Origin: Ophelia neglecta
Lineage: Eukaryota
Reading direction: 5' to 3'
Assembly: GCA_965285935.1 (NCBI GenBank)
Contig: OZ260661.1
Coordinates: 120,032,001 to 120,096,000 of the forward strand
DNA length: 64,000 nt
This document shows positions 2,775 to 64,000 of the stretch, in pieces (the first letter of the stretch is position 1; every line of letters starts with the position of its first letter). A program made the position numbers and the translations under genes. The notes below the pieces were generated by a model. The model was not told the DNA's origin. It saw nothing but the letters and a program-made list of their open reading frames with translations, and made no database searches.

Positions 2775-43353
<40,579 letters not shown>

Positions 43354-55400: not shown

Positions 55401-58400
55401 ATGTGCCACTGGTGTTAGTCCTTTCAAGTTATGTTCCTGGTAGATCTAAGTGTTAGACAATAGAATGCTGTTGTTCATTTACATTTACAACAATACAGAC
55501 ATGAAATGTGCATGGTGTGGAAAGGAAAATGAAGACACGTCAGATCTTCAGTGGTGGTATGACCATTGGGAGAATATGATGCCTTTGGTTTGGCCTACTG
55601 GTATATGAACTTGTTCATAGAAAATGTATTATTTATTGTTATTTATTTTTCCCAAGTTGTGTTTTGTGTGTATATATATATATTTATGTACATGTATATA
55701 CTAATTACAGTCCTTATTGATTTTTGTAGTTCTTGTACCTGATCTTATGGAATAAGTAATTTTTATTTGTACTCAGTTCTTATGATATTCTTGGTTTTAT
55801 TATGTACCAGCCTGCATTTTGCAAAAGGATAATTATAGATAATGCCATATTTGAATCTCCACAAACAGTGCCATTGATGGTGAACTATTTTTGTCATTTA
55901 AAGCAGTGCCTTTGAATTCATGGCTTAAAGTTATAATAAATAGTTAATAATAATTATTATTATGGACTATGTATTAGCAAATTTACATCTTTTGATGATT
56001 GAAATACTCAGAAACTAAATTTTGTATTTCTAACAATTTGGGCATCCATTTTTAATTCTAAGTGCTCTTTTGCTGGCCAATCTTAATTAAGGACTCTGAC
56101 CATGAAATAAAAAATGTGTTTAATGGTATTGGTAATCTACCGGACCAACCTTTACATTTTGCATTGGAGCATTTAAAAAATGGTTATTATTATTCTTATG
56201 ACTGATAAAATGCAAGATTAAGTGGCAAATAACCTATTTTTAATTATAATGTTTCATTTATGCAATTTCTCAGTTCAATTGAAGCATGTGGCTATGAAGG
56301 AAAAGTTAGTTTTGTAGCTAAGTTTACATTGGTTCTGATTGAGCCACCAGCTTACCAGTGGGCCACCCAGTTTGAGAACCACAGAATTAGTATCAGATGC
56401 CCTTATTAATTTAATATGCTGTTTTCTATAAATTGTCAAACCTGTTAAATTCAAACTCTGTTCATATGGTAGTGATTTTTTCTGTCTTGGAACAGCAAAG
56501 TGTGCCAAGTCAACAACTTGCTTTCATGTTTTACTATTTATAGGTGAATTATTACATACACAGTGTTTTGTCTTTCAGAAATTTAAAGCTAGGCAGTTTT
56601 CACAAAATTGAGATAGTACAAAATGACAGGGTTAAGGTGATGTTATAGGCTATACCTGCTTATCCTCTTATGAAAGTCTCAATTCCAAGGATATTTCCAA
56701 CTTTCCAAAAAAAGTTCCTGCTTTGACTATATAAATGTACAAATTGTCGATAAAAATGATCCTGAAAATATTCAGCATGCCTGCACAACGAAAAACAACC
56801 ATATATTAAGTAAGCTTGCATGTAAATCTATTATGGTGACCACCAATTTTACTTAAATCAAAATAAATCAAAAAGGCACTTGTATAAGTTTAAACTGAAG
56901 TAAGTTAATCTTTTTTCTTTTACATGAGAATTCATTAAAAAAATGTGTATGTTTCTTGTGTACAATACAAGCTAGTCTGAAATTTTTCCTCTGGCTGTGA
57001 CTGTTAAGAGGTGCTTTTCACAAGGACTATTGGACTGACCTTATAGGATGTCTCTATGGTCATTATTACCACATTTTGGTTGGTTCATTTTTGGAAGGCC
57101 TCGGCTTTGAAATGTTATCCTTTTTGGCAGGCCACTCTGTGGATGGCCCTTTTTTCTCAAACCGGGATGGCCTAATGCAAGTGAAGCTAATATTTATAGC
57201 ATTTCTGTCATATATCTATAAAGACGTTTTAAATAGCTATCATATTTAATATGTGTATTAAATTGGACCCTAAAGCTACATACTGTCCTAGGCATTTTCA
57301 TTATATGTTATATACCTGACTTGTGTGTATGCAAATGATGCAGATTTTTATGAATTCATGAACTTGAATAAGTGAAATACCTTTATCATGTGCAATAAAC
57401 TAATGATTGTCATAACTTTTGTAATTAACAAGTACAATACTGATATGCATATTCTATTAAATTGATTTGTTGTGTTTCATACTATTTTCTTTTAACTTAT
57501 TTCATCGCGTCAAAGCGTATAATAATAAATCAAATTTTATGTCTTGTGGTTAAGAAACTGTAACACAGTAACACTGATCCCATTAATTTGAGATTTCACA
57601 TGTAGTAAATAATAGAATAGTTTTGCTAGAGAAAGGGCTTATAATTTTACTGGTTAGTTATATAGTAAGTAAATTTTCTGGCTGGCCCAGGCATGCCTGT
57701 GGAGGGGAGGGGTAAAAGGCACTACAGAAGTAAGTGCCAATGGTGTGAGCAAAAGTCAATATTTACTCTCAAACTCTAGTCGTATTATCCTATGCATGTT
57801 GTTTGTGCTTTGAACATTCATAATCTTACTTTATTATGTTGAGGAGTTACCTTGAAATTATGATTACCCTATTATATTCCTAAGATTAAATATTAAACAC
57901 CATCATTTGTATTTTATGTAAACAGGTCCCCATTGGTAGTAAACCCATTTTTTATCAACTATGCTCCTGATATAATTTTTTTGACATTTTATCTGTAACT
58001 GTTTCCCATTCTATCTACATTTTCTGTAATAATATATTTCCAATATATCTGTGAATGTGAAAAACTCATTTTGGATTGTATGTATTGTAACCAAGTTATT
58101 ATGTCTTTATCTAATGAATATTTATTGTCTGTTTTACAATTTTAGTATTATTTTAACTGTTCATCATTGGAAGTATTTTATTGACTTGGTTACTTGAAAA
58201 TGTCTTGGTTTAATAAAGTGTTTGAATTGAAAAAAAGTGTATTTTGTGGAGTGGGTGACACAGTGTATATATATAGTGGGGGATAAACTCTTAACAGTAG
58301 AACCATACTGCAAGACTAATGGATAAAACTATTGTGTATTAAATTGAAAACTAGATTGGTTTTTTTAGCCTGCATAATTTAGTACAAATGACGGAAGGTG

Positions 58401-58627
58401 CCATCCTAAATTGAGGGGTAAGTTGACTGAGAATGGGTCACTCTTAGTGCTACGGACTTGCACATGTCCTGAACAGAGGGATTTGTGCTTTTGCAAATAA
58501 TGGCAGATCATGGGATTTTAATTTGGCATTTAGCGATTTGGCACAATTCAGTAACTGAGTGATTCTCTTTATTTTCATGCTCCTTTTATGCTGGACCCAA
58601 TACGTAAATCATGAGTTTCAATTGACC

Positions 58628-58985
58628 AATCCTCTGTGGCACAACTGGTGAATGTGTGCACATTTAAAGCATCTGATACGTGACCAGGAGAATGCGTGTT
58701 TGAGTCCCATCAGAAACAGGGGGTTTTTGTCTGCATTCGGCCCCAATCCAGGGTAGGCCAAGGTAGGCCTGCTACAGGCCTAATGGGAAGGTTAAAAGCC
58801 AGGTGAATGAGCATCATCCACTTAAAGGATGTGACAAAGGAGGGTGACCGGGGCTATGACCTAGTATTGTAGGGAGGATTACCCGGCGATCCTGCAGGTG
58901 TCGAAGGGTCAACCGGGCCTGGGTAACTCCGAGGTAGTAGTCGGAATGGTCCGGCAAATGCTAGATCATGACTGGTCACGTTGTT
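58628..58985 (+). mobile_element. tRNA-derived SINE-like element with a GC-rich structured body
   Basis: Pol III A-box-like TGGCACAACTGG (58637-58648) and B-box-like GTTTGAGTCCC (58698-58708), then about 280 nt of GC-rich sequence in AT-rich DNA. Confidence 0.5.
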
Positions 58986-60829
58986 AGAAAGATGGTGCTC
59001 TCACCCTTCATGCAGTCCCTTAGCGAAATGCACCCATATATAGAAAATATATGTAAAAATACGTATGTGGTGTCTTATGTTCATGTCCAATGTATGTGCT
59101 GTGCATATAACAAAAAATGGTCGGCGTTGGCCACAAAAATATTTCAATTGCTACATGAAAAATGAGGTTCATGAAGATATGAATTTACCCCTACTCTAGA
59201 CTTATTAGAATTATTGTTGTCACAAACAATGTTGACCGACACACCAAGGTGGCCATCCTTCTTTTTTAACTGACCCAAAACCCATCTCAGTTCATTTCCC
59301 CCTAGGAAAAATAGCTCCCATGCAGCAGGTATAAAATCTTCCATTTTTCAAGTCTTCCTTGCTTTGGGCCTACTACTACCCTGCTTACAGTTTTCATGTG
59401 GCTAATGCCATAATAGTGACTTTGTAATGAAGTTTCCCTCTGTGAGCGGGGTATAGGTCTACTTGCAAAATTCATGCAATTATCCGATGAAAATTAGTTT
59501 TAACAGTATCTGACAAATATACAATTAAAATACAGTAAGGCAAGAAATACTTGTCAACAGAAAATATTCACGATTTTCCCAACTGATGCAAATATAACAA
59601 TAACTTTCTGCGTGATCATTAACTATTGTGAAAAGTCATTTCACAGTACAGGCCATCAGTGAATATTTCATGAACCAAATCATAGAGCTTAATCTAAATT
59701 CACACTTTCCTCTGGCATAAATTTCTTGGATTATAATAAGACATTTAAGTGCAGCACACATAAACTGCATGGACATGGGTTTGTCAATGCCATCTTGTTT
59801 AATTTTTTTACAGCATAGTATAACTAGGCCCATGCTGTCAGGGGGCAGACAGCAAGGGGTTTATCCGCCAATGTGTGCAATTGTTGATTGGCATACATGC
59901 TACAAGATTGGGTTATGAATATGCTAGTTCTTAGTTTGTACGAAAGACAAGGAAAGTGTTTGCACCATTAATGAAATAAATTAACTGAAATAGTATAATG
60001 ATGTAAATTTTATGACAAAGGCCACATCATGGTCAAACTTCCCTATATAACTCATTAATAAAGAAATAAAAGCTTAACTAATTTTTCTATCATTATCAAT
60101 AAAATAAAACAAAACACCAAGGTATTAATGTCGAATTTTCGGCAGGCAAGCCTGCCTTCTTCTGGACTTTATTTAAAATGAAAGGTTTATATTGACTAGT
60201 GACCCTTCCCCTGTGACGATATACCGTGACTTCATACTCAACTATCGCTACCTTTATCCACCGAGCAAACTTATTCCTGCCCCTACTTCATGCTCCCCAT
60301 CACACGGTGGATTTATTATACGGGTCGCTGAAAAGATACCCATTGGACCGGGCAGTCCTCCAGGCTATCCAACAGCGACCCCTAACTACCATTTCTAACT
60401 ACAAATATCAAAATTTCACACCCTTTAAAAAAAACTTTAGACTAGTTATTAAGTACTGTAAGAATATCCTTTGGTGTTATTTATTATAGAACCCAATGTT
60501 GTCAGCGAGCTACCCAACCCTTACTCCTCCTGGTATTGGTTATATAGGCAGGAGGGGGAGGTATGATTTCCTCAGTGCTGGAACAACCAGAAGTTTACTC
60601 TTCTCGGGATCCATAGTATAGAATAATTAACCTGAGATTATATTTATATAAATTCATTGACACGGACACCACCTTTAGAATCTAAATTTAAATAGGAAAC
60701 CGACCATGGATGATAATGGAATTTTAATAGTGAATGACTTTTACACTCTAATTGTTAAGAAGCTACTAAAAGTTACAAAACACTATAGTTTGTGTCATAC
60801 CATTTAATGTTATATTATATTATATTAAA

Positions 60830-61216
60830 TCACGAGGGTAATAAAATCAACACTAATTTATTTTTATTTAACCCATTAGGCATTAGAGTTTGAAGTTTCA
60901 CAATCCATTTACTCTCTGATATTTTTCTAAGCTGTTCTGGTTTTGTGCCCAAAGCCTCTAAACCCACCACCTTAAAATCCCCCAGGCCATGATCATGTGT
61001 GTTAAAATGAACAGCTACCTCGGAAGTATTACATTTTTGTACCCTTACATTACTAATATGGTTGTTTAATCTTTTGTATAAATCTGTACCTGTTTCCCCT
61101 ACATACACTATTTTTTGGCACCTAGCACACCATATCCCATATACCGCGTTATGCGTCTTACAGTGAATATCCCCAACTATCTGATATTTCTTATCCTTAA
61201 TTTCAATAAACCGCAA
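60830..61216 (-). pseudogene. GIY-YIG endonuclease domain of the Penelope-like element
   Basis: VYGI..YVGETG motif, conserved Arg, HFN, Glu and PNGLN. Confidence 0.9.
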
Positions 61217-61395
61217 TATGGAATCATTCTCTTACATAATACACAATGTTTACTCCCACATGCCCGTGAACCCTCGTCTTTTCTATAGAACATTCTTTCA
61301 TGTTTACTATGTACTAATATGTCCGCTATATTTCTATTTATTTAAAATGACACTAAAGGAGGCTTTTTAAAAACCTCCTTACATCTATCTGAATT

Positions 61396-63187
61396 TTACA
61401 ATAATGACATGTTTCTTCTTACAATACCATGAATATTTGGAAGCCAACTTGAAAAATTTATCACTAACGGAACCCTCACAGTATCATCCCTATTAAGTGT
61501 TTTTCTGTATCTCAGAAGTTCTACTCTATCCGCACTATCCACCCCCTTAACTGACATCCTGAGTTGTTTCCCATCATAGCCTCTTTTTTTCAAATTATTT
61601 ATCATATTATCCCTATTTTGTCGGTACTTTCCCTCATCACTACAAATCCTTTTTATTCTTATTGCCTGTCCTTTAGCTAGCCCTTGCTTTACATGTTTAG
61701 GATGGTCAGAATCTTCGCGAATGTACAGGTGCCGATCCGTGGGTTTAACAAATAAATCTGTCTCTATCTTTGAACCGTTTAAAGTTGTCTTGGTAGCTAA
61801 AAATTCAACTGTTTCGCCATTCCTTAACTCTATTTTAATATTAGGGTGATTATCATTAGCCAACCTCCCAAACTCTTCCAGTTCTAACCTTGTCCCGCCC
61901 CATAATCCCCAAATGTCATCAACGAATCTATAGATCCCATTAGGCTTTACTTTCGCTCTTTCTAGTAGCTCTTTCTCCCATTGAATTAAGTAAGCAGAAG
62001 CATAATTTTTACCTAGTTTACTGCCTATTGCGGTCCCTACCTTTTGTCTGAAATATTTCCCACCGAACTCAAAATAATTGTTTTCCAAAACCAAATCAAT
62101 CATTTGTAATATTCTTTCTGTATGTGTGTCTTTGCAACTTCGGCCTTCCAGTGCTACCTTGCATGCTTCCCTACCTTCCTTACGCGGCACACTAGGGTAT
62201 AATTTATTTACATCCATACAAAATAATATTGCTTTCTCTGGGATTTCTTTTTTTGTTTAGCTCCTCAATTTTTTGAATAAAGTGTGTCGTGTCTTTTATA
62301 AACGTATCTGACTGAACCACAAATTCCTCTAATTCTTTCTCGCAAAATTCTGCTATGGGGGTAGTTGGATGATTCACTGAACTTATTATTATTCTTAAAG
62401 GCTTTTCTGTTTTATGCATTTTTGGATTACCTTTTATTTTCACATAGTTATAGTATTTTGGATTAAAATGGCTTTTACTTCCTCTACTGAACTCCTTATT
62501 ACCAACCTCCCCGTCCAAAAGATTTCTGAGTTTTTTCTTTAGGGTTTTGTCAAAATTTACTTCCGCTTCTTCATATAAATCGGCATTGTCTAATTCCTCC
62601 CTGAGCTTCTGTTCATAATCATTCCTATTTAATACACATATACCCGAACCTTTATCAGCCGGTCTGATGACTATACTGTCATCTTTTAAAATCTCTTTTA
62701 CTGCACTATGCTCCCGTTTAGTAAGATTGCTATCTATTCCTGACTTCAAATTATTTAGGATATCATTTTTTACACTATCGATGTACGCATCTAACCATTT
62801 ATCCCTGCCGTTCGGTGGTGTCCAAGCACTTTTCTTTTTATTCCTAATTTTGACATTTCTTCTCCTACTTACCTCTACCGACTCACCTGTTCCTTGCTCA
62901 TTAACACCTTCATCATAAAAAAATTCTGATAATCTCATTCTCCGTTCCCACTCCTGTAACTGTTGTTTAATTTCGAAGATGTCCGGTCTGTCCCTACTTG
63001 GTATATATTTAAGACCTTTACCAATTACCGATTTTTGTTCATTGGTTAAAACTTTATCCGATAGGTTAAAAATTGTCGCGTCCTGTCCATTACTCTCTTC
63101 TGAACCCTTCCCCGTTTTAGCTCCCCGCACCCGCTTCAGTTTTTTTACTTTTCGAGCTCCCGCTTTTCGCTTACCTTCTGGTTTCAA
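61396..63187 (-). pseudogene. Penelope reverse transcriptase region (frameshifted)
   Basis: ORFs 62204..63187 and 61396..62217 join through a frameshift at an A-run near 62245-62256 (..EIPEKAILFCMDVNKLY..). Confidence 0.9.
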
Positions 63188-63268
63188 TTCACTATCTTCA
63201 TTTAAAATTGGATTTACATCATTTAAACTAAGAGCGTCATACCTATTTACATCTACAAAGTCTTTGGT

Positions 63269-63940
63269 TCATGTCTTTATACCCCTTGTCCGTCCGTATC
63301 CATTTCGTCTGATTCCTACCAATGTCCACTTATTCATATCCTCTATGTCATTTGCGTGTTTTGCAGAATCTGTTGTCTTTACCGGTGTTAGAATATTAAA
63401 ATGTTCATTCTTCAGTCTAAGGTTTATGTCTTTCTGGTTATCTTCTCTATGTCCGCCATTATATTTGATCCATCGTTTACTTGATTCGCAATACACTTTT
63501 ATAACTATACCTAACGAGTCCGCTGTTGCCCCGATCTCACAATCTGTTGCGTATGACTCAGTTGATCCGTCCGTTTTTCGCATATCTTCCATATGTTTGG
63601 CATTATTACCTGTGAAAAATGATTGGTATGCTACATAATTTTGTTCCATATAATCAACCGTTTTGTTCCTAAAATATTTGTGTTTTTCTTCAGTTCCCAT
63701 CATACACTTACTGATACACCGAAAAAAACAATTGCCGTCCCCTTTTACATCTACTATCTGCCAATCATTGTTATCAAACTTCATACAACCTGTATCTATG
63801 TAATCCTCGTTTGTTAAGATAACCTTATTGATCTCTTTGCGTTTTTTCGTTTTATCAACACTATCTTTAACTACAGATCTAAATTTACTTAGCTTTTGGT
63901 CAATCTCTTTCGCTGTTGAATATCCGAGCTCATCTACCAT
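63269..63940 (-). CDS. OTU-family cysteine protease/deubiquitinase domain of the Penelope-like ORF
   Basis: IVDVKGDGNCFFRCIS (Asp/Cys loop), YATDCEIGATA..L..VIKVY, INLRLKNEHFN (His/Asn); same frame as 62204..63187. Confidence 0.88.
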   Translation of the reverse strand: MVDELGYSTAKEIDQKLSKFRSVVKDSVDKTKKRKEINKVILTNEDYIDTGCMKFDNNDWQIVDVKGDGNCFFRCISKCMMGTEEKHKYFRNKTVDYMEQNYVAYQSFFTGNNAKHMEDMRKTDGSTESYATDCEIGATADSLGIVIKVYCESSKRWIKYNGGHREDNQKDINLRLKNEHFNILTPVKTTDSAKHANDIEDMNKWTLVGIRRNGYGRTRGIKT

Positions 63941-64000
63941 ACTCTTGTCTTCTTTCTTTGATTTCTTTGCCCAACGTTTCTAGTTTTTCACAGCACGTCT

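What the first reader, a model, noticed from the sequence alone, without database searches (positions are those of the whole stretch)
62204..63940. Penelope-like retroelement with an in-frame OTU deubiquitinase domain
Seen: the OTU ORF (catalytic Cys codon 63728-63730, His 63401-63403, followed by Asn) ends at a single TGA (63269-63271). The same frame then runs open (TKDFVDVNRYDALSL..) straight into the RT-upstream ORF, with uniform A-rich composition. The ancestral ORF was therefore OTU-RT-Cys linker-GIY-YIG. Known: canonical PLEs encode an N-terminal region, RT and GIY-YIG; OTU/Ulp1-type proteases occur in some DNA transposons, Helitrons, a few LINE clades and viruses, where viral OTUs counter ubiquitin-based immunity. 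I do not recall a described OTU-bearing Penelope family. Inference: a captured DUB for polyprotein processing or for evading ubiquitin-dependent silencing or degradation.
Basis: partly seen in the sequence, partly recalled or inferred. Interest (0 to 1): 0.82.

Follow-up and report, generated by a model that had tools for sequence, protein, structure and literature searches.

The report
Penelope-like retrotransposon carrying an OTU deubiquitinase
The window holds a broken copy of a recently active Penelope-like retrotransposon whose single protein begins with an OTU-type ubiquitin-removing protease, and this fusion marks a whole, apparently undescribed lineage of such elements in aquatic animals.

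Summary
Window 63272-63940 (minus strand) encodes an OTU domain (Pfam E 7e-12). Its Cys is at 63728-63730 and its His at 63401-63403. One TGA (63269-63271) separates it, in the same frame, from the N-terminal region of a Penelope-like element (PLE).

Two other copies in this genome carry an uninterrupted 1123-aa ORF: helical N-terminal domain, OTU, PLE N-terminal region, reverse transcriptase (RT), Cys linker, GIY-YIG endonuclease. They read GGA where the window has TGA. The window copy is a 97.8%-identical pseudogene with three nonsense and three frameshift lesions, and it runs past the window's end.

The fusion is not a chance nesting:
- At least three more divergent OTU-PLE families occur in this genome.
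- 35 distinct protein clusters (50% identity level) in public data show the OTU in PLE context, including a pearl oyster and a sturgeon assembly.
- All 27 OTU-bearing proteins fall in one RT clade (support 100).
- Catalytic Asp, Cys and His are invariant.

The fold matches OTUD1/3/5 and nairovirus OTUs, and a ubiquitin complex model passes its controls. The nearest non-PLE OTUs sit in Helentron and hAT DNA transposons.

No paper in the searched library describes an OTU-bearing PLE. Function is inferred and untested. I rate it a new variant of a known kind.

The parts
63941..64000 (-). C-terminal end of the family's N-terminal helical domain. It is thrown out of frame by a 1-base insertion at 63946. 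The domain and the ORF start (about 64229 in window-extended coordinates) lie beyond the window's end.
   Evidence: Pairwise alignment with the intact copy L031. The intact ORF has about 96 more N-terminal residues. The AF2 model shows three long helices over residues 2-132, pLDDT mostly 80-97.
63395..63760 (-). OTU cysteine-protease (deubiquitinase) domain. Asp is at 63737-63739, catalytic Cys at 63728-63730, His at 63401-63403, Asn at 63395-63397.
   Evidence: Pfam PF02338 E 7.1e-12. Codon positions. Foldseek matches to OTUD5, OTUD3, OTUD1 and CCHFV vOTU.
63269..63271 (-). Copy-specific nonsense mutation: TGA here, GGA (Gly, codon 320) in the intact copies.
   Evidence: None of the 8 other near-identical copies has a stop in the OTU region.
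62204..63268 (-). KR-rich linker, then the PLE-specific N-terminal region upstream of the RT (GLKY, WERRMRL and DKG motifs). A 1-base insertion at 62254 shifts the frame.
   Evidence: Translation, alignment A1, lesion list.
61396..62217 (-). Reverse-transcriptase core (a 273-aa ORF piece in another frame). It ends at a CAA>TAA nonsense mutation at 61396-61398. A second one, AAA>TAA, is at 61342-61344.
   Evidence: A profile of this region across the family hits reverse transcriptases in 18 of its 19 PDB matches, best E 1e-4. Homologues P0236 and P0239 carry RVT_1.
60854..61395 (-). [quoted passage not shown] There is a 2-base insertion at 61218-61219. The original stop codon is mutated TAA>TTA at 60854-60856.
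   Evidence: Pfam PF01541 E 5.1e-7..
60847..64000 (-). In-window part of the main 4.08-kb unit. It is 97.8% identical to the intact unit L031:612-4690 and continues to about 64923 outside the window.
   Evidence: BLASTN, genome DNA search.
60749..60846 (-). Spacer of about 98 bp between the unit's end and the downstream partial unit. It is present in a subset of copies and absent in L031.
60100..60748 (-). Downstream partial unit (pseudo-LTR or tail). It is 94% identical to the first about 670 bases of the unit, the non-coding region that precedes the ORF in the next tandem unit.
60130..60167 (-). Decayed copy of the family's hammerhead-ribozyme-like motif. Its core reads CAGA where intact copies have CUGA.
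   Evidence: Sequence reading. The intact motif is at L031:1216-1243, and its helices covary across families.

Best explanation
Window 60100-64000 (minus strand) is a dead, roughly 2%-diverged copy of an autonomous Penelope-like retrotransposon (PLE). Its single ORF (1123 aa in intact copies) reads: helical N-terminal domain, OTU deubiquitinase, basic linker, PLE N-terminal region, RT, Zn-finger-like Cys linker, GIY-YIG endonuclease.

Shown here:
- The OTU is an integral and ancestral part of a deep PLE lineage, not a nested insert.
- Its catalytic residues are conserved.
- It has a compact OTUD/vOTU-type fold.
- It is modelled to hold ubiquitin with the tail in the active site.
- The element family is young, mostly 5'-truncated and tandemly arranged, and carries a hammerhead-like motif about 70-95 nt upstream of the ATG.

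Inferred:
- The OTU works as a deubiquitinase riding on the RT-endonuclease protein, much as the N-terminal OTU of the nairovirus L polymerase does.
- It would strip ubiquitin, or a ubiquitin-like modifier, from the element's own protein or ribonucleoprotein, or from host factors at the integration site.
- The effect would be to escape ubiquitin-dependent degradation or restriction, or to tune repair signalling during target-primed reverse transcription.
- It probably does not cut the polyprotein.
For: - Intact copies: single 1123-aa ORFs at L031:1312-4683 and L032:3026-6397. The window copy differs by +1 at 63946, GGA>TGA at 63269-71, +1 at 62254, two TAA nonsense codons, and +2 at 61218-9.
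- Other copies: 8 near-identical copies have the OTU region without stops, in open frames up to 1133 aa.
- Family structure: a 4079-bp unit, tandem or partial-tandem. Most copies are 5'-truncated and 98-100% identical.
- Other families in this genome: at least three more divergent OTU-PLE families. One is a tandem array of 1195-aa ORFs sharing 35% OTU identity and 53% RT-endonuclease identity with this one.
- Public data: 35 representatives of 50%-identity clusters have the OTU in PLE context, with Asp 35/35, Cys 35/35 and His 34/34.
- RT tree: all 27 OTU-bearing proteins lie in one clade of 58 (SH-aLRT 100). No protein on the other side of that branch has an OTU.
- Fold: the AF2 model (pLDDT 82) matches OTUD5 3tmp, OTUD3 4bou, OTUD1 4bop and CCHFV vOTU 3phw at E 4e-7 to 1e-5.
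- Ubiquitin complex: with the host's own ubiquitin the score is 0.80, against a best control of 0.08. That mark was reached by 51 of 78 solved complexes and 2 of 108 mismatched pairs. Runs agree in 100% of contacts and partner pLDDT is 93. Ubiquitin residues 71-76 touch OTU residues 163-168 and 275-277.
- PLE hallmarks: GLKY and DKG motifs, CX4CxxC linker, CCHH-type GIY-YIG. The RT profile's PDB matches are reverse transcriptases in 18 of 19.
- Hammerhead-like motif: 85% of cells paired and 7 of 11 pairs changed on both sides, against 31-59% paired in slid controls.
Against: - No enzymatic or expression data. No RNA run holds the element.
- The complex model may score from memory of solved OTU-ubiquitin structures. 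It cannot separate ubiquitin from ISG15 or NEDD8.
- Three in-clade proteins keep the N-terminal domain but lack the OTU (P0194, P0207, P0227), so the OTU is dispensable for at least some lineages.
- Rfam's hammerhead models do not call the motif.
- Pfam RVT_1 does not reach threshold on this family's RT.
- The PLE subclade (Neptune against Nematis) rests on motifs only.
Confidence: 0.7

Rival explanations
1. The OTU is mainly a self-processing protease. It would cut the polyprotein to release the N-terminal module from the RT-endonuclease, as arterivirus PLP2 and tymovirus PRO do, with any deubiquitinase activity secondary.
For: Viral OTU-type proteases can do both jobs (established knowledge; review PMC3968130 listed). 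A poorly conserved, probably disordered linker of 26-192 aa separates the OTU from the PLE N-terminal region. This family's linker holds one VRGA site.
Against: Only 4 of 39 family members have any [LIVR]xG[GAS] site in the linker, and the position is not conserved. The nairovirus precedent shows that an N-terminal OTU on a polymerase needs no processing role. The ubiquitin model fits a canonical S1 site.
Confidence: 0.12
2. Chance chimera. An OTU-bearing fragment, for example from a Helentron, landed in frame inside one PLE copy, so the fusion is not a property of the element.
For: The nearest non-PLE OTUs are in Helentron and hAT proteins.
Against: All copies that reach this region have the OTU. 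Two copies have intact 1123-aa ORFs. Several divergent in-genome families and 35 public clusters share the architecture. All lie in one RT clade. No Rep or helicase domains occur in the ORF.
Confidence: 0.01
3. The OTU is retained but catalytically irrelevant. It would serve as a ubiquitin- or ubiquitin-like-binding or scaffolding module, or it would act on a modifier other than ubiquitin (ISG15-like, NEDD8, SUMO).
For: The complex model cannot tell which family member binds. The third triad position varies: N 19, D 8, S 3, K 1 of 34.
Against: Asp, Cys and His are invariant across 35 clusters at 50% identity or less. This is hard to explain without catalysis.
Confidence: 0.15
4. The in-frame TGA is recoded (selenocysteine or readthrough), as in Naiad PLE selenoproteins, so the window copy is not broken at that point.
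For: Naiad PLEs with in-frame UGA are known (PMC8557442).
Against: The TGA aligns to GGA (Gly), not Cys, and occurs only in this copy. The copy has five other disabling lesions.
Confidence: 0.01

Closest known systems
Canonical C-terminal-endonuclease Penelope-like elements with a Zn-finger linker (Neptune/Nematis type; Arkhipova 2006; Craig et al. 2021, PMC8557442)
   Same: Single ORF. GxKF/Y and DKG motifs. RT. CX2-5CxxC linker. GIY-YIG with internal Cys pair and His (CCHH). Tandem or partial-tandem copies with pseudo-LTRs. 5' truncation. A hammerhead-type motif. AT-rich or (TA)n insertion sites in some copies.
   Different: Carries an extra N-terminal module of about 300 aa (helical domain plus OTU) that the 2021 survey does not mention. 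The hammerhead variant has an extra A after the CUGANGA box and is missed by Rfam. Clade placement against reference sequences was not tested.
OTU domains of animal DNA transposons: Helentrons (Rep/Hel plus OTU, with or without an AP endonuclease) and Ginger1 (integrase plus OTU) (PMC2836005, PMC6431247)
   Same: A transposon-encoded OTU fused to the transposition enzyme. Helentron and hAT OTUs are the nearest non-PLE relatives of this OTU and mix with PLE OTUs in the domain tree.
   Different: Those are DNA transposons, and the OTU position varies (N-terminal, internal or C-terminal). Here the OTU sits at the N-terminus of a retroelement RT.
Josephin-like cysteine-protease extensions in Chlamys-1_cBra (a PLE) and Dualen non-LTR elements (PMC8557442, citing Kojima and Fujiwara 2005)
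   Same: A deubiquitinase-class cysteine protease attached to a retroelement polyprotein, thought to disturb protein degradation.
   Different: A different protease family (Josephin against OTU). Weak homology only. C-terminal position. Algal hosts. Single families rather than a deep clade.
Viral OTU proteases, especially the N-terminal vOTU of the nairovirus L polymerase (e.g. PDB 3phw, 3pse; PMC3968130)
   Same: A compact OTU at the N-terminus of a polymerase protein. Structural matches have TM-scores by target length of 0.57-0.70, E down to 1.6e-6. The vOTU removes ubiquitin and ISG15 rather than processing the polyprotein (established knowledge).
   Different: Only 12-22% sequence identity. 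RNA viruses of vertebrates and ticks. No evidence of shared descent beyond the OTU superfamily.

Membership tests
Penelope-like elements (endonuclease-positive, C-terminal GIY-YIG) | Reverse transcriptase with PLE-specific upstream motifs (GxKF/Y, DKG) | tested here: met
   GLKY and IRPADKGSG are present and invariant in alignment A1. The motif definitions come from PMC8557442. The RT-region profile's PDB matches are reverse transcriptases in 18 of 19. Homologues at 32-33% identity carry RVT_1. Pfam RVT_1 itself is below threshold on this family.
Penelope-like elements (endonuclease-positive, C-terminal GIY-YIG) | [quoted passage not shown] | tested here: met
   PF01541 E 5.1e-7 and 3.8e-6. 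A Cys-x2-Cys lies between the two motifs, with His residues downstream, in the translation.
Penelope-like elements (endonuclease-positive, C-terminal GIY-YIG) | Tandem or partial-tandem copies giving pseudo-LTRs, and 5'-truncated copies | tested here: met
   L031 self-match at period 4077. Genome copies end at unit base 4079, followed by bases 1 to about 700. Inverted pairs are also present. The second family forms a tandem array of period 3748.
Penelope-like elements (endonuclease-positive, C-terminal GIY-YIG) | Hammerhead ribozyme motif in the repeat | tested here: inconclusive
   A CUGANGA...GAAA core with helices I and II lies about 70-95 nt upstream of the ATG in at least 4 divergent families. 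85% of cells are paired and 7 of 11 pairs change on both sides. No Rfam hammerhead model scores it. Self-cleavage was not tested.
Penelope-like elements (endonuclease-positive, C-terminal GIY-YIG) | RT groups with reference PLEs (sister to telomerase RT) in phylogeny | not testable with these tools
   No reference PLE or telomerase RT set could be fetched. The look-alike clusters in the ESM Atlas are PLE-type: DUF8422, HTH_animal, RVT_1, GIY-YIG.
Neptune/Nematis-type PLE (as opposed to Penelope/Poseidon, Hydra, Naiad/Chlamys) | CX2-5CxxC linker upstream of a C-terminal endonuclease, with DKG (not DKT or DKA) and CCHH present | tested here: met
   C-x4-C-x2-C precedes the GIY-YIG. Criteria from PMC8557442. 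This excludes Penelope/Poseidon (no linker), Hydra (DKT, no CCHH) and Naiad/Chlamys (N-terminal endonuclease). Neptune and Nematis were not separated.
OTU deubiquitinases (Pfam PF02338) | Family profile match above the curated cut-off | tested here: met
   46.4 bits against a cut-off of 23.3 on the window ORF. 42 bits on the intact ORFs of two families.
OTU deubiquitinases (Pfam PF02338) | Catalytic Cys and His with the Asp of the Cys loop and an acidic or amide third residue | tested here: met
   DGNC...HFN in the window copy. Asp 35/35, Cys 35/35, His 34/34 and N/D 27/34 in PLE-context representatives.
OTU deubiquitinases (Pfam PF02338) | OTU fold | tested here: met
   AF2 pLDDT 82. Foldseek probability 1.00 to OTUD5, OTUD3, OTUD1 and nairovirus vOTUs, TM-score by target length up to 0.79. 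The ESM Atlas matches are all OTU clusters.
OTU deubiquitinases (Pfam PF02338) | Binds ubiquitin at the S1 site and hydrolyses the isopeptide bond | not testable with these tools
   Model only: score 0.80 against a best control of 0.08. The mark was reached by 51 of 78 solved complexes and 2 of 108 mismatched pairs. 100% contact agreement, partner pLDDT 93. Hydrolysis needs an assay.
Helitron/Helentron | Rep (Helitron_like_N) and PIF1-type helicase domains in the same protein | tested here: not met
   Pfam finds only OTU at E up to 0.05 in the 1123-aa and 1195-aa ORFs. The Helentron proteins P0081, P0083 and P0160 do show those domains.
Selenoprotein-coding PLEs (Naiad type) | In-frame TGA conserved among copies at Cys positions | tested here: not met
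   The TGA occurs only in the window copy and aligns to GGA Gly.

The most novel reading that the evidence does not exclude
An ancient, still active lineage of Penelope-like retrotransposons acquired a helical-domain-plus-OTU deubiquitinase module once and has kept it catalytically intact across bivalves, a fish and many aquatic eukaryotes. The module belongs to a pool of OTUs that moves between unrelated transposon classes (Helentron, hAT, Ginger1, PLE). On this reading it acts as a portable counter-defence cassette against a ubiquitin-based restriction of mobile elements that has not yet been defined.
Probability: 0.35. Interest if true: 0.75.

Novelty: new variant of a known kind. Interest (0 to 1): 0.62.

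Why it matters
PLEs are described as coding only for an RT and a GIY-YIG endonuclease. Here a whole RT clade carries a conserved deubiquitinase as well. That makes PLEs the second retroelement group, after scattered Josephin-like cases, with a ubiquitin-system enzyme, and the first with a deep, conserved one.

The same kind of OTU sits in Helentron, hAT and Ginger1 DNA transposons. This points to a shared need of very different mobile elements to undo ubiquitination, a need that has been suggested but never tested.

A single-ORF element with intact natural copies, a clear active-site residue and a modelled ubiquitin interface makes the question approachable by biochemistry. It also matters for annotation: such proteins are now filed as 'OTU domain-containing' or hypothetical host proteins.

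Tried and rejected
- Rfam scans of L031, L033 and L034, and of the 171-base region around the motif, gave no hammerhead call. The motif was found by pattern search and supported by covariation instead.
- Pfam RVT_1 did not reach threshold on this family's RT, even at E up to 10. A single-sequence PDB search of the RT region found nothing. A family profile then hit reverse transcriptases.
- The profile word search was saturated at 8000 candidates and added little, so the exhaustive HMMER search was used.
- No RNA run holds the element. Read laying was not used, because contigs of the same sample cannot show expression.
- The codon-level dN/dS estimate was dropped. The in-genome families are 66% identical at the DNA level, too saturated, and the within-family copies are too alike or already dead.
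- A conserved ubiquitin-tail-like cleavage site in the linker was looked for and not found.
- The selenocysteine reading of the TGA was rejected.
- The host-gene reading was rejected on copy number, truncations, tandem arrays and decayed copies.
- Two 'Penelope + OTU' paper hits used OTU to mean operational taxonomic unit.
- The scan's earlier findings held nothing for this place or these words.
- The host organism's name is coded and was not pursued.
Full report
**1. The observation**

On the minus strand, window 63269..63940 is a 223-aa ORF and 62204..63187 a 327-aa ORF in the same frame. Translating 62204-63940 gives 579 codons with one internal stop, the TGA at 63269-63271. Pfam scores the upstream ORF as OTU (PF02338, E 7.1e-12, 46.4 bits against a cut-off of 23.3). 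It scores 60833-61216 as GIY-YIG (PF01541, E 5.1e-7). The catalytic Cys codon is at 63728-63730. The His codon is at 63401-63403, with Asn two residues later. Composition is uniformly A-rich on the coding strand from the RT through the OTU.

**2. What the copy is**

A six-frame search of the window's own genome with the OTU ORF found 49 matches. Eight of them are 96-98% identical with no stop inside, in open frames up to 1133 aa.
- Two loci carry an uninterrupted 1123-aa ORF: L031:1312-4683 and L032:3026-6397.
- The ORF order is a helical N-terminal domain, OTU, a basic linker, the PLE N-terminal region (GLKY, WERRMRL, DKG), the RT, a C-x4-C-x2-C linker and GIY-YIG.
- At the window's TGA these copies read GGA.
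- The window copy is 97.8% identical over the 4079-bp unit.
- It is broken by a 1-base insertion at 63946, the TGA, a 1-base insertion at 62254, TAA codons at 61396-98 and 61342-44, and a 2-base insertion at 61218-19. Its stop codon is mutated to TTA at 60854-56.
- The unit runs past the window's end to about 64923. The true ATG is at about 64229.

**3. Family anatomy**

The unit is about 700 bp of non-coding sequence followed by the 3372-bp ORF, and units abut head to tail.
- Across the genome most copies are 5'-truncated. They end at unit base 4079 and are followed by bases 1 to about 700 of the next unit. Some have a spacer of about 99 bp, and some form inverted pairs.
- Many copies are 98-100% identical, so activity was recent.
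- 3' ends fall at two positions about 35 and about 60 nt after a hammerhead-like motif. Two of twelve 3' junctions lie in (TA)n.
- The motif is CUGANGA, an extra A, helix II, GAAAU(A/U)U(A/C), then the helix I partner. It lies about 70-95 nt upstream of the ATG in at least four divergent families.
- On the five-sequence alignment 85% of cells pair. Seven of 11 pairs change on both sides. No shuffle reaches the covariation score, and slid controls pair at 31-59%.
- Rfam does not call it, so I treat it as a probable, untested PLE-type hammerhead.
- The only in-window copy of the motif (60130-60167) has CAGA in place of CUGA.

**4. Is it a PLE, and which kind?**

- The GxKF/Y and DKG motifs, the CX2-5CxxC linker and the Cys pair inside the GIY-YIG are the features Craig et al. 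2021 use for canonical C-terminal-endonuclease PLEs (PMC8557442).
- Together they exclude Penelope/Poseidon (no linker), Hydra (DKT, no CCHH) and Naiad/Chlamys (N-terminal endonuclease). That leaves the Neptune/Nematis type.
- Pfam RVT_1 is below threshold here. However, a profile of the RT region matches reverse transcriptases in 18 of its 19 PDB hits (best E 1e-4).
- Homologues at 32-33% identity carry RVT_1 plus GIY-YIG.
- ESM Atlas look-alikes are PLE-type clusters (DUF8422, HTH_animal, RVT_1, GIY-YIG) in animals. None lists OTU among its common families.

**5. Is the OTU integral?**

Within this genome there are at least three more divergent OTU-PLE families.
- One is a tandem array of 1195-aa ORFs with 35% OTU identity and 53% RT-endonuclease identity to this family.
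- A word search found full-length OTU-PLE proteins of 1017-1107 aa at 34-43% identity from other sources.

An exhaustive HMMER search with a profile of the N-terminal domain plus OTU gave 73 representatives at E 1e-30 or better. Home-made domain HMMs then labelled 35 representatives of 50%-identity clusters as OTU in PLE context. In these, Asp is 35/35, Cys 35/35, His 34/34, and the third residue is N or D in 27/34.

An unbiased search with the RT-endonuclease region returned 69 proteins.
- Named hits include Pinctada imbricata (1069 aa, with OTU), Mercenaria, Ruditapes and Saccostrea.
- A 53-member cluster comes from an Acipenser sinensis assembly that NCBI flags UNVERIFIED_CONTAM.

In the RT-plus-endonuclease tree all 27 OTU-bearing rows lie in one clade of 58 (SH-aLRT 100). 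The 18 rows on the other side have no OTU.
- Inside the clade, most non-OTU rows are truncated or start at internal Met codons.
- Three keep the N-terminal domain but lack the OTU (P0194, P0207, P0227; no Pfam hit). I read these as secondary loss.
- A few others carry unrelated N-terminal extensions, or short leaders whose completeness cannot be judged.
- So the OTU was most likely gained once, at the base of this lineage.

**6. The OTU itself**

- The AF2 model (pLDDT 82) shows three long helices over residues 2-132, followed by an OTU fold.
- Foldseek's best PDB matches are OTUD5/DUBA, OTUD3, OTUD1 and nairovirus vOTUs (E 4e-7 to 1e-5). ESM Atlas structure matches are all OTU clusters.
- With the host's own ubiquitin (L043:2151-2378, minus strand) the complex test gave 0.80 against a best control of 0.08. 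That mark was reached by 51 of 78 solved complexes and 2 of 108 mismatched pairs. Runs agree in 100% of contacts and partner pLDDT is 93.
- In the model the Leu8/Ile44/His68/Val70 face of ubiquitin lies on OTU residues 203-205 and 229-234. The ubiquitin tail (residues 71-76) reaches 163-168 and 275-277, the Cys loop and the His.
- Similar complexes are solved, so this shows likeness, not proof of binding.

**7. Where the OTU came from**

The nearest long non-PLE proteins carry Helitron_like_N plus PIF1, with or without an AP endonuclease. These are Helentrons (P0081, P0083, P0160). Another carries a hAT dimerisation domain (P0086).

In the OTU-domain tree, 34 of 35 PLE OTUs fall in a group of 39 (SH-aLRT 91) together with two Helentron OTUs and one hAT OTU. 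Strongly supported branches do not rule out one origin. Fragments of unknown context were left out of that tree.

OTUs in Helitrons and in Ginger1 transposases are documented (PMC2836005; PMC6431247).

**8. Mechanism**

Shown: architecture, conservation, fold, a modelled ubiquitin interface, and a young mobile family.

Inferred: the OTU acts as a deubiquitinase riding on the RT-endonuclease protein. It would protect that protein or its ribonucleoprotein from ubiquitin-dependent degradation or restriction, or adjust ubiquitin signalling at the nicked target. This resembles the N-terminal OTU of the nairovirus L polymerase.

Self-processing is less likely. Only 4 of 39 linkers contain any ubiquitin-tail-like site, and none is conserved in position.

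**9. Novelty**

- Full-text searches for Penelope-like elements together with OTU or deubiquitinase terms returned no paper describing such an element. Two apparent hits used OTU for taxonomic units.
- The 2021 PLE survey mentions only a weak Josephin-like extension in one Chlamys family.
- Repbase and Dfam could not be queried, so prior cataloguing there remains possible.
- I rate it a new variant of a known kind. The finding is real, broad and testable, but conceptually it is in line with the deubiquitinase domains already known in DNA transposons.

**10. Limits**

There are no expression data and no enzymology. The host name is coded. Subclade placement rests on motifs. The vertebrate occurrence rests on an assembly flagged for contamination. 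Broken pieces were searched apart.

Noticed in passing
L031:1312-1700 (intact copy); window 63941-64000 and beyond the window's end: The N-terminal domain of about 130 aa is predicted as three long helices at high confidence. It is conserved across the OTU-PLE clade (YxSH..FL..C......PxGF.LKW). It persists in three relatives that lack the OTU, has no Pfam match, and its role is unknown (oligomerisation or RNA binding?).
   Followed up: partly
Linker between the OTU and the PLE N-terminal region, e.g. window about 63230-63250 (DFVDV) and the A1 alignment: A short acidic-aromatic motif, D-W-F-(D/E)-(L/M/I/V), recurs in 16 of 39 family linkers that are otherwise unalignable. It resembles an LC3-interacting or other short linear motif. 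Unexplained.
   Followed up: partly
L031:1216-1250; L033:2464-2492; L038:7335-7362 (minus strand): The hammerhead-like motif always has an extra A after CUGANGA and a near-palindromic AUAU or AUUU stretch after GAAA. This fits the dimer-type PLE hammerheads and may explain why the Rfam models miss it.
   Followed up: partly
window 60749-60846, and equivalent places in other copies: A spacer of about 99 bp between the unit's end and the next unit's start splits the family into two subfamilies. The downstream partial units of spacer-bearing copies are about 94-96% identical to L031, against 98-100% for copies without it.
   Followed up: no
L034:5023-7385 (just beyond the window's end, G000:C1:120097022-120099384): More partial copies of the same element lie upstream, some in inverted orientation. 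Together they form the complex tandem and inverted cluster typical of PLE insertions.
   Followed up: partly
L047 (G000:C8:12218857-12219007) and L052 (G000:C2:27941025-27941175): Two of twelve 3' junctions examined abut long (TA)n microsatellites, and the others lie in AT-rich DNA. This is weakly in line with the (TA)n preference reported for linker-bearing PLEs.
   Followed up: partly
G000:C8:12038078-12052363 (L033, L017-L020): A second OTU-PLE family forms a perfect tandem array of at least four 3748-bp units, each with an open 1195-1197-aa frame.
   Followed up: partly
window 58250-59250: GC content rises to 0.40-0.48 against about 0.32 around it, just downstream of the element cluster. 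Not examined.
   Followed up: no
P0092 (892 aa, public protein): One of the related OTU proteins combines a herpesvirus-tegument N-terminal protease domain (PF04843) with an OTU. An ESM Atlas cluster with that pair is mostly from Chordata.
   Followed up: no
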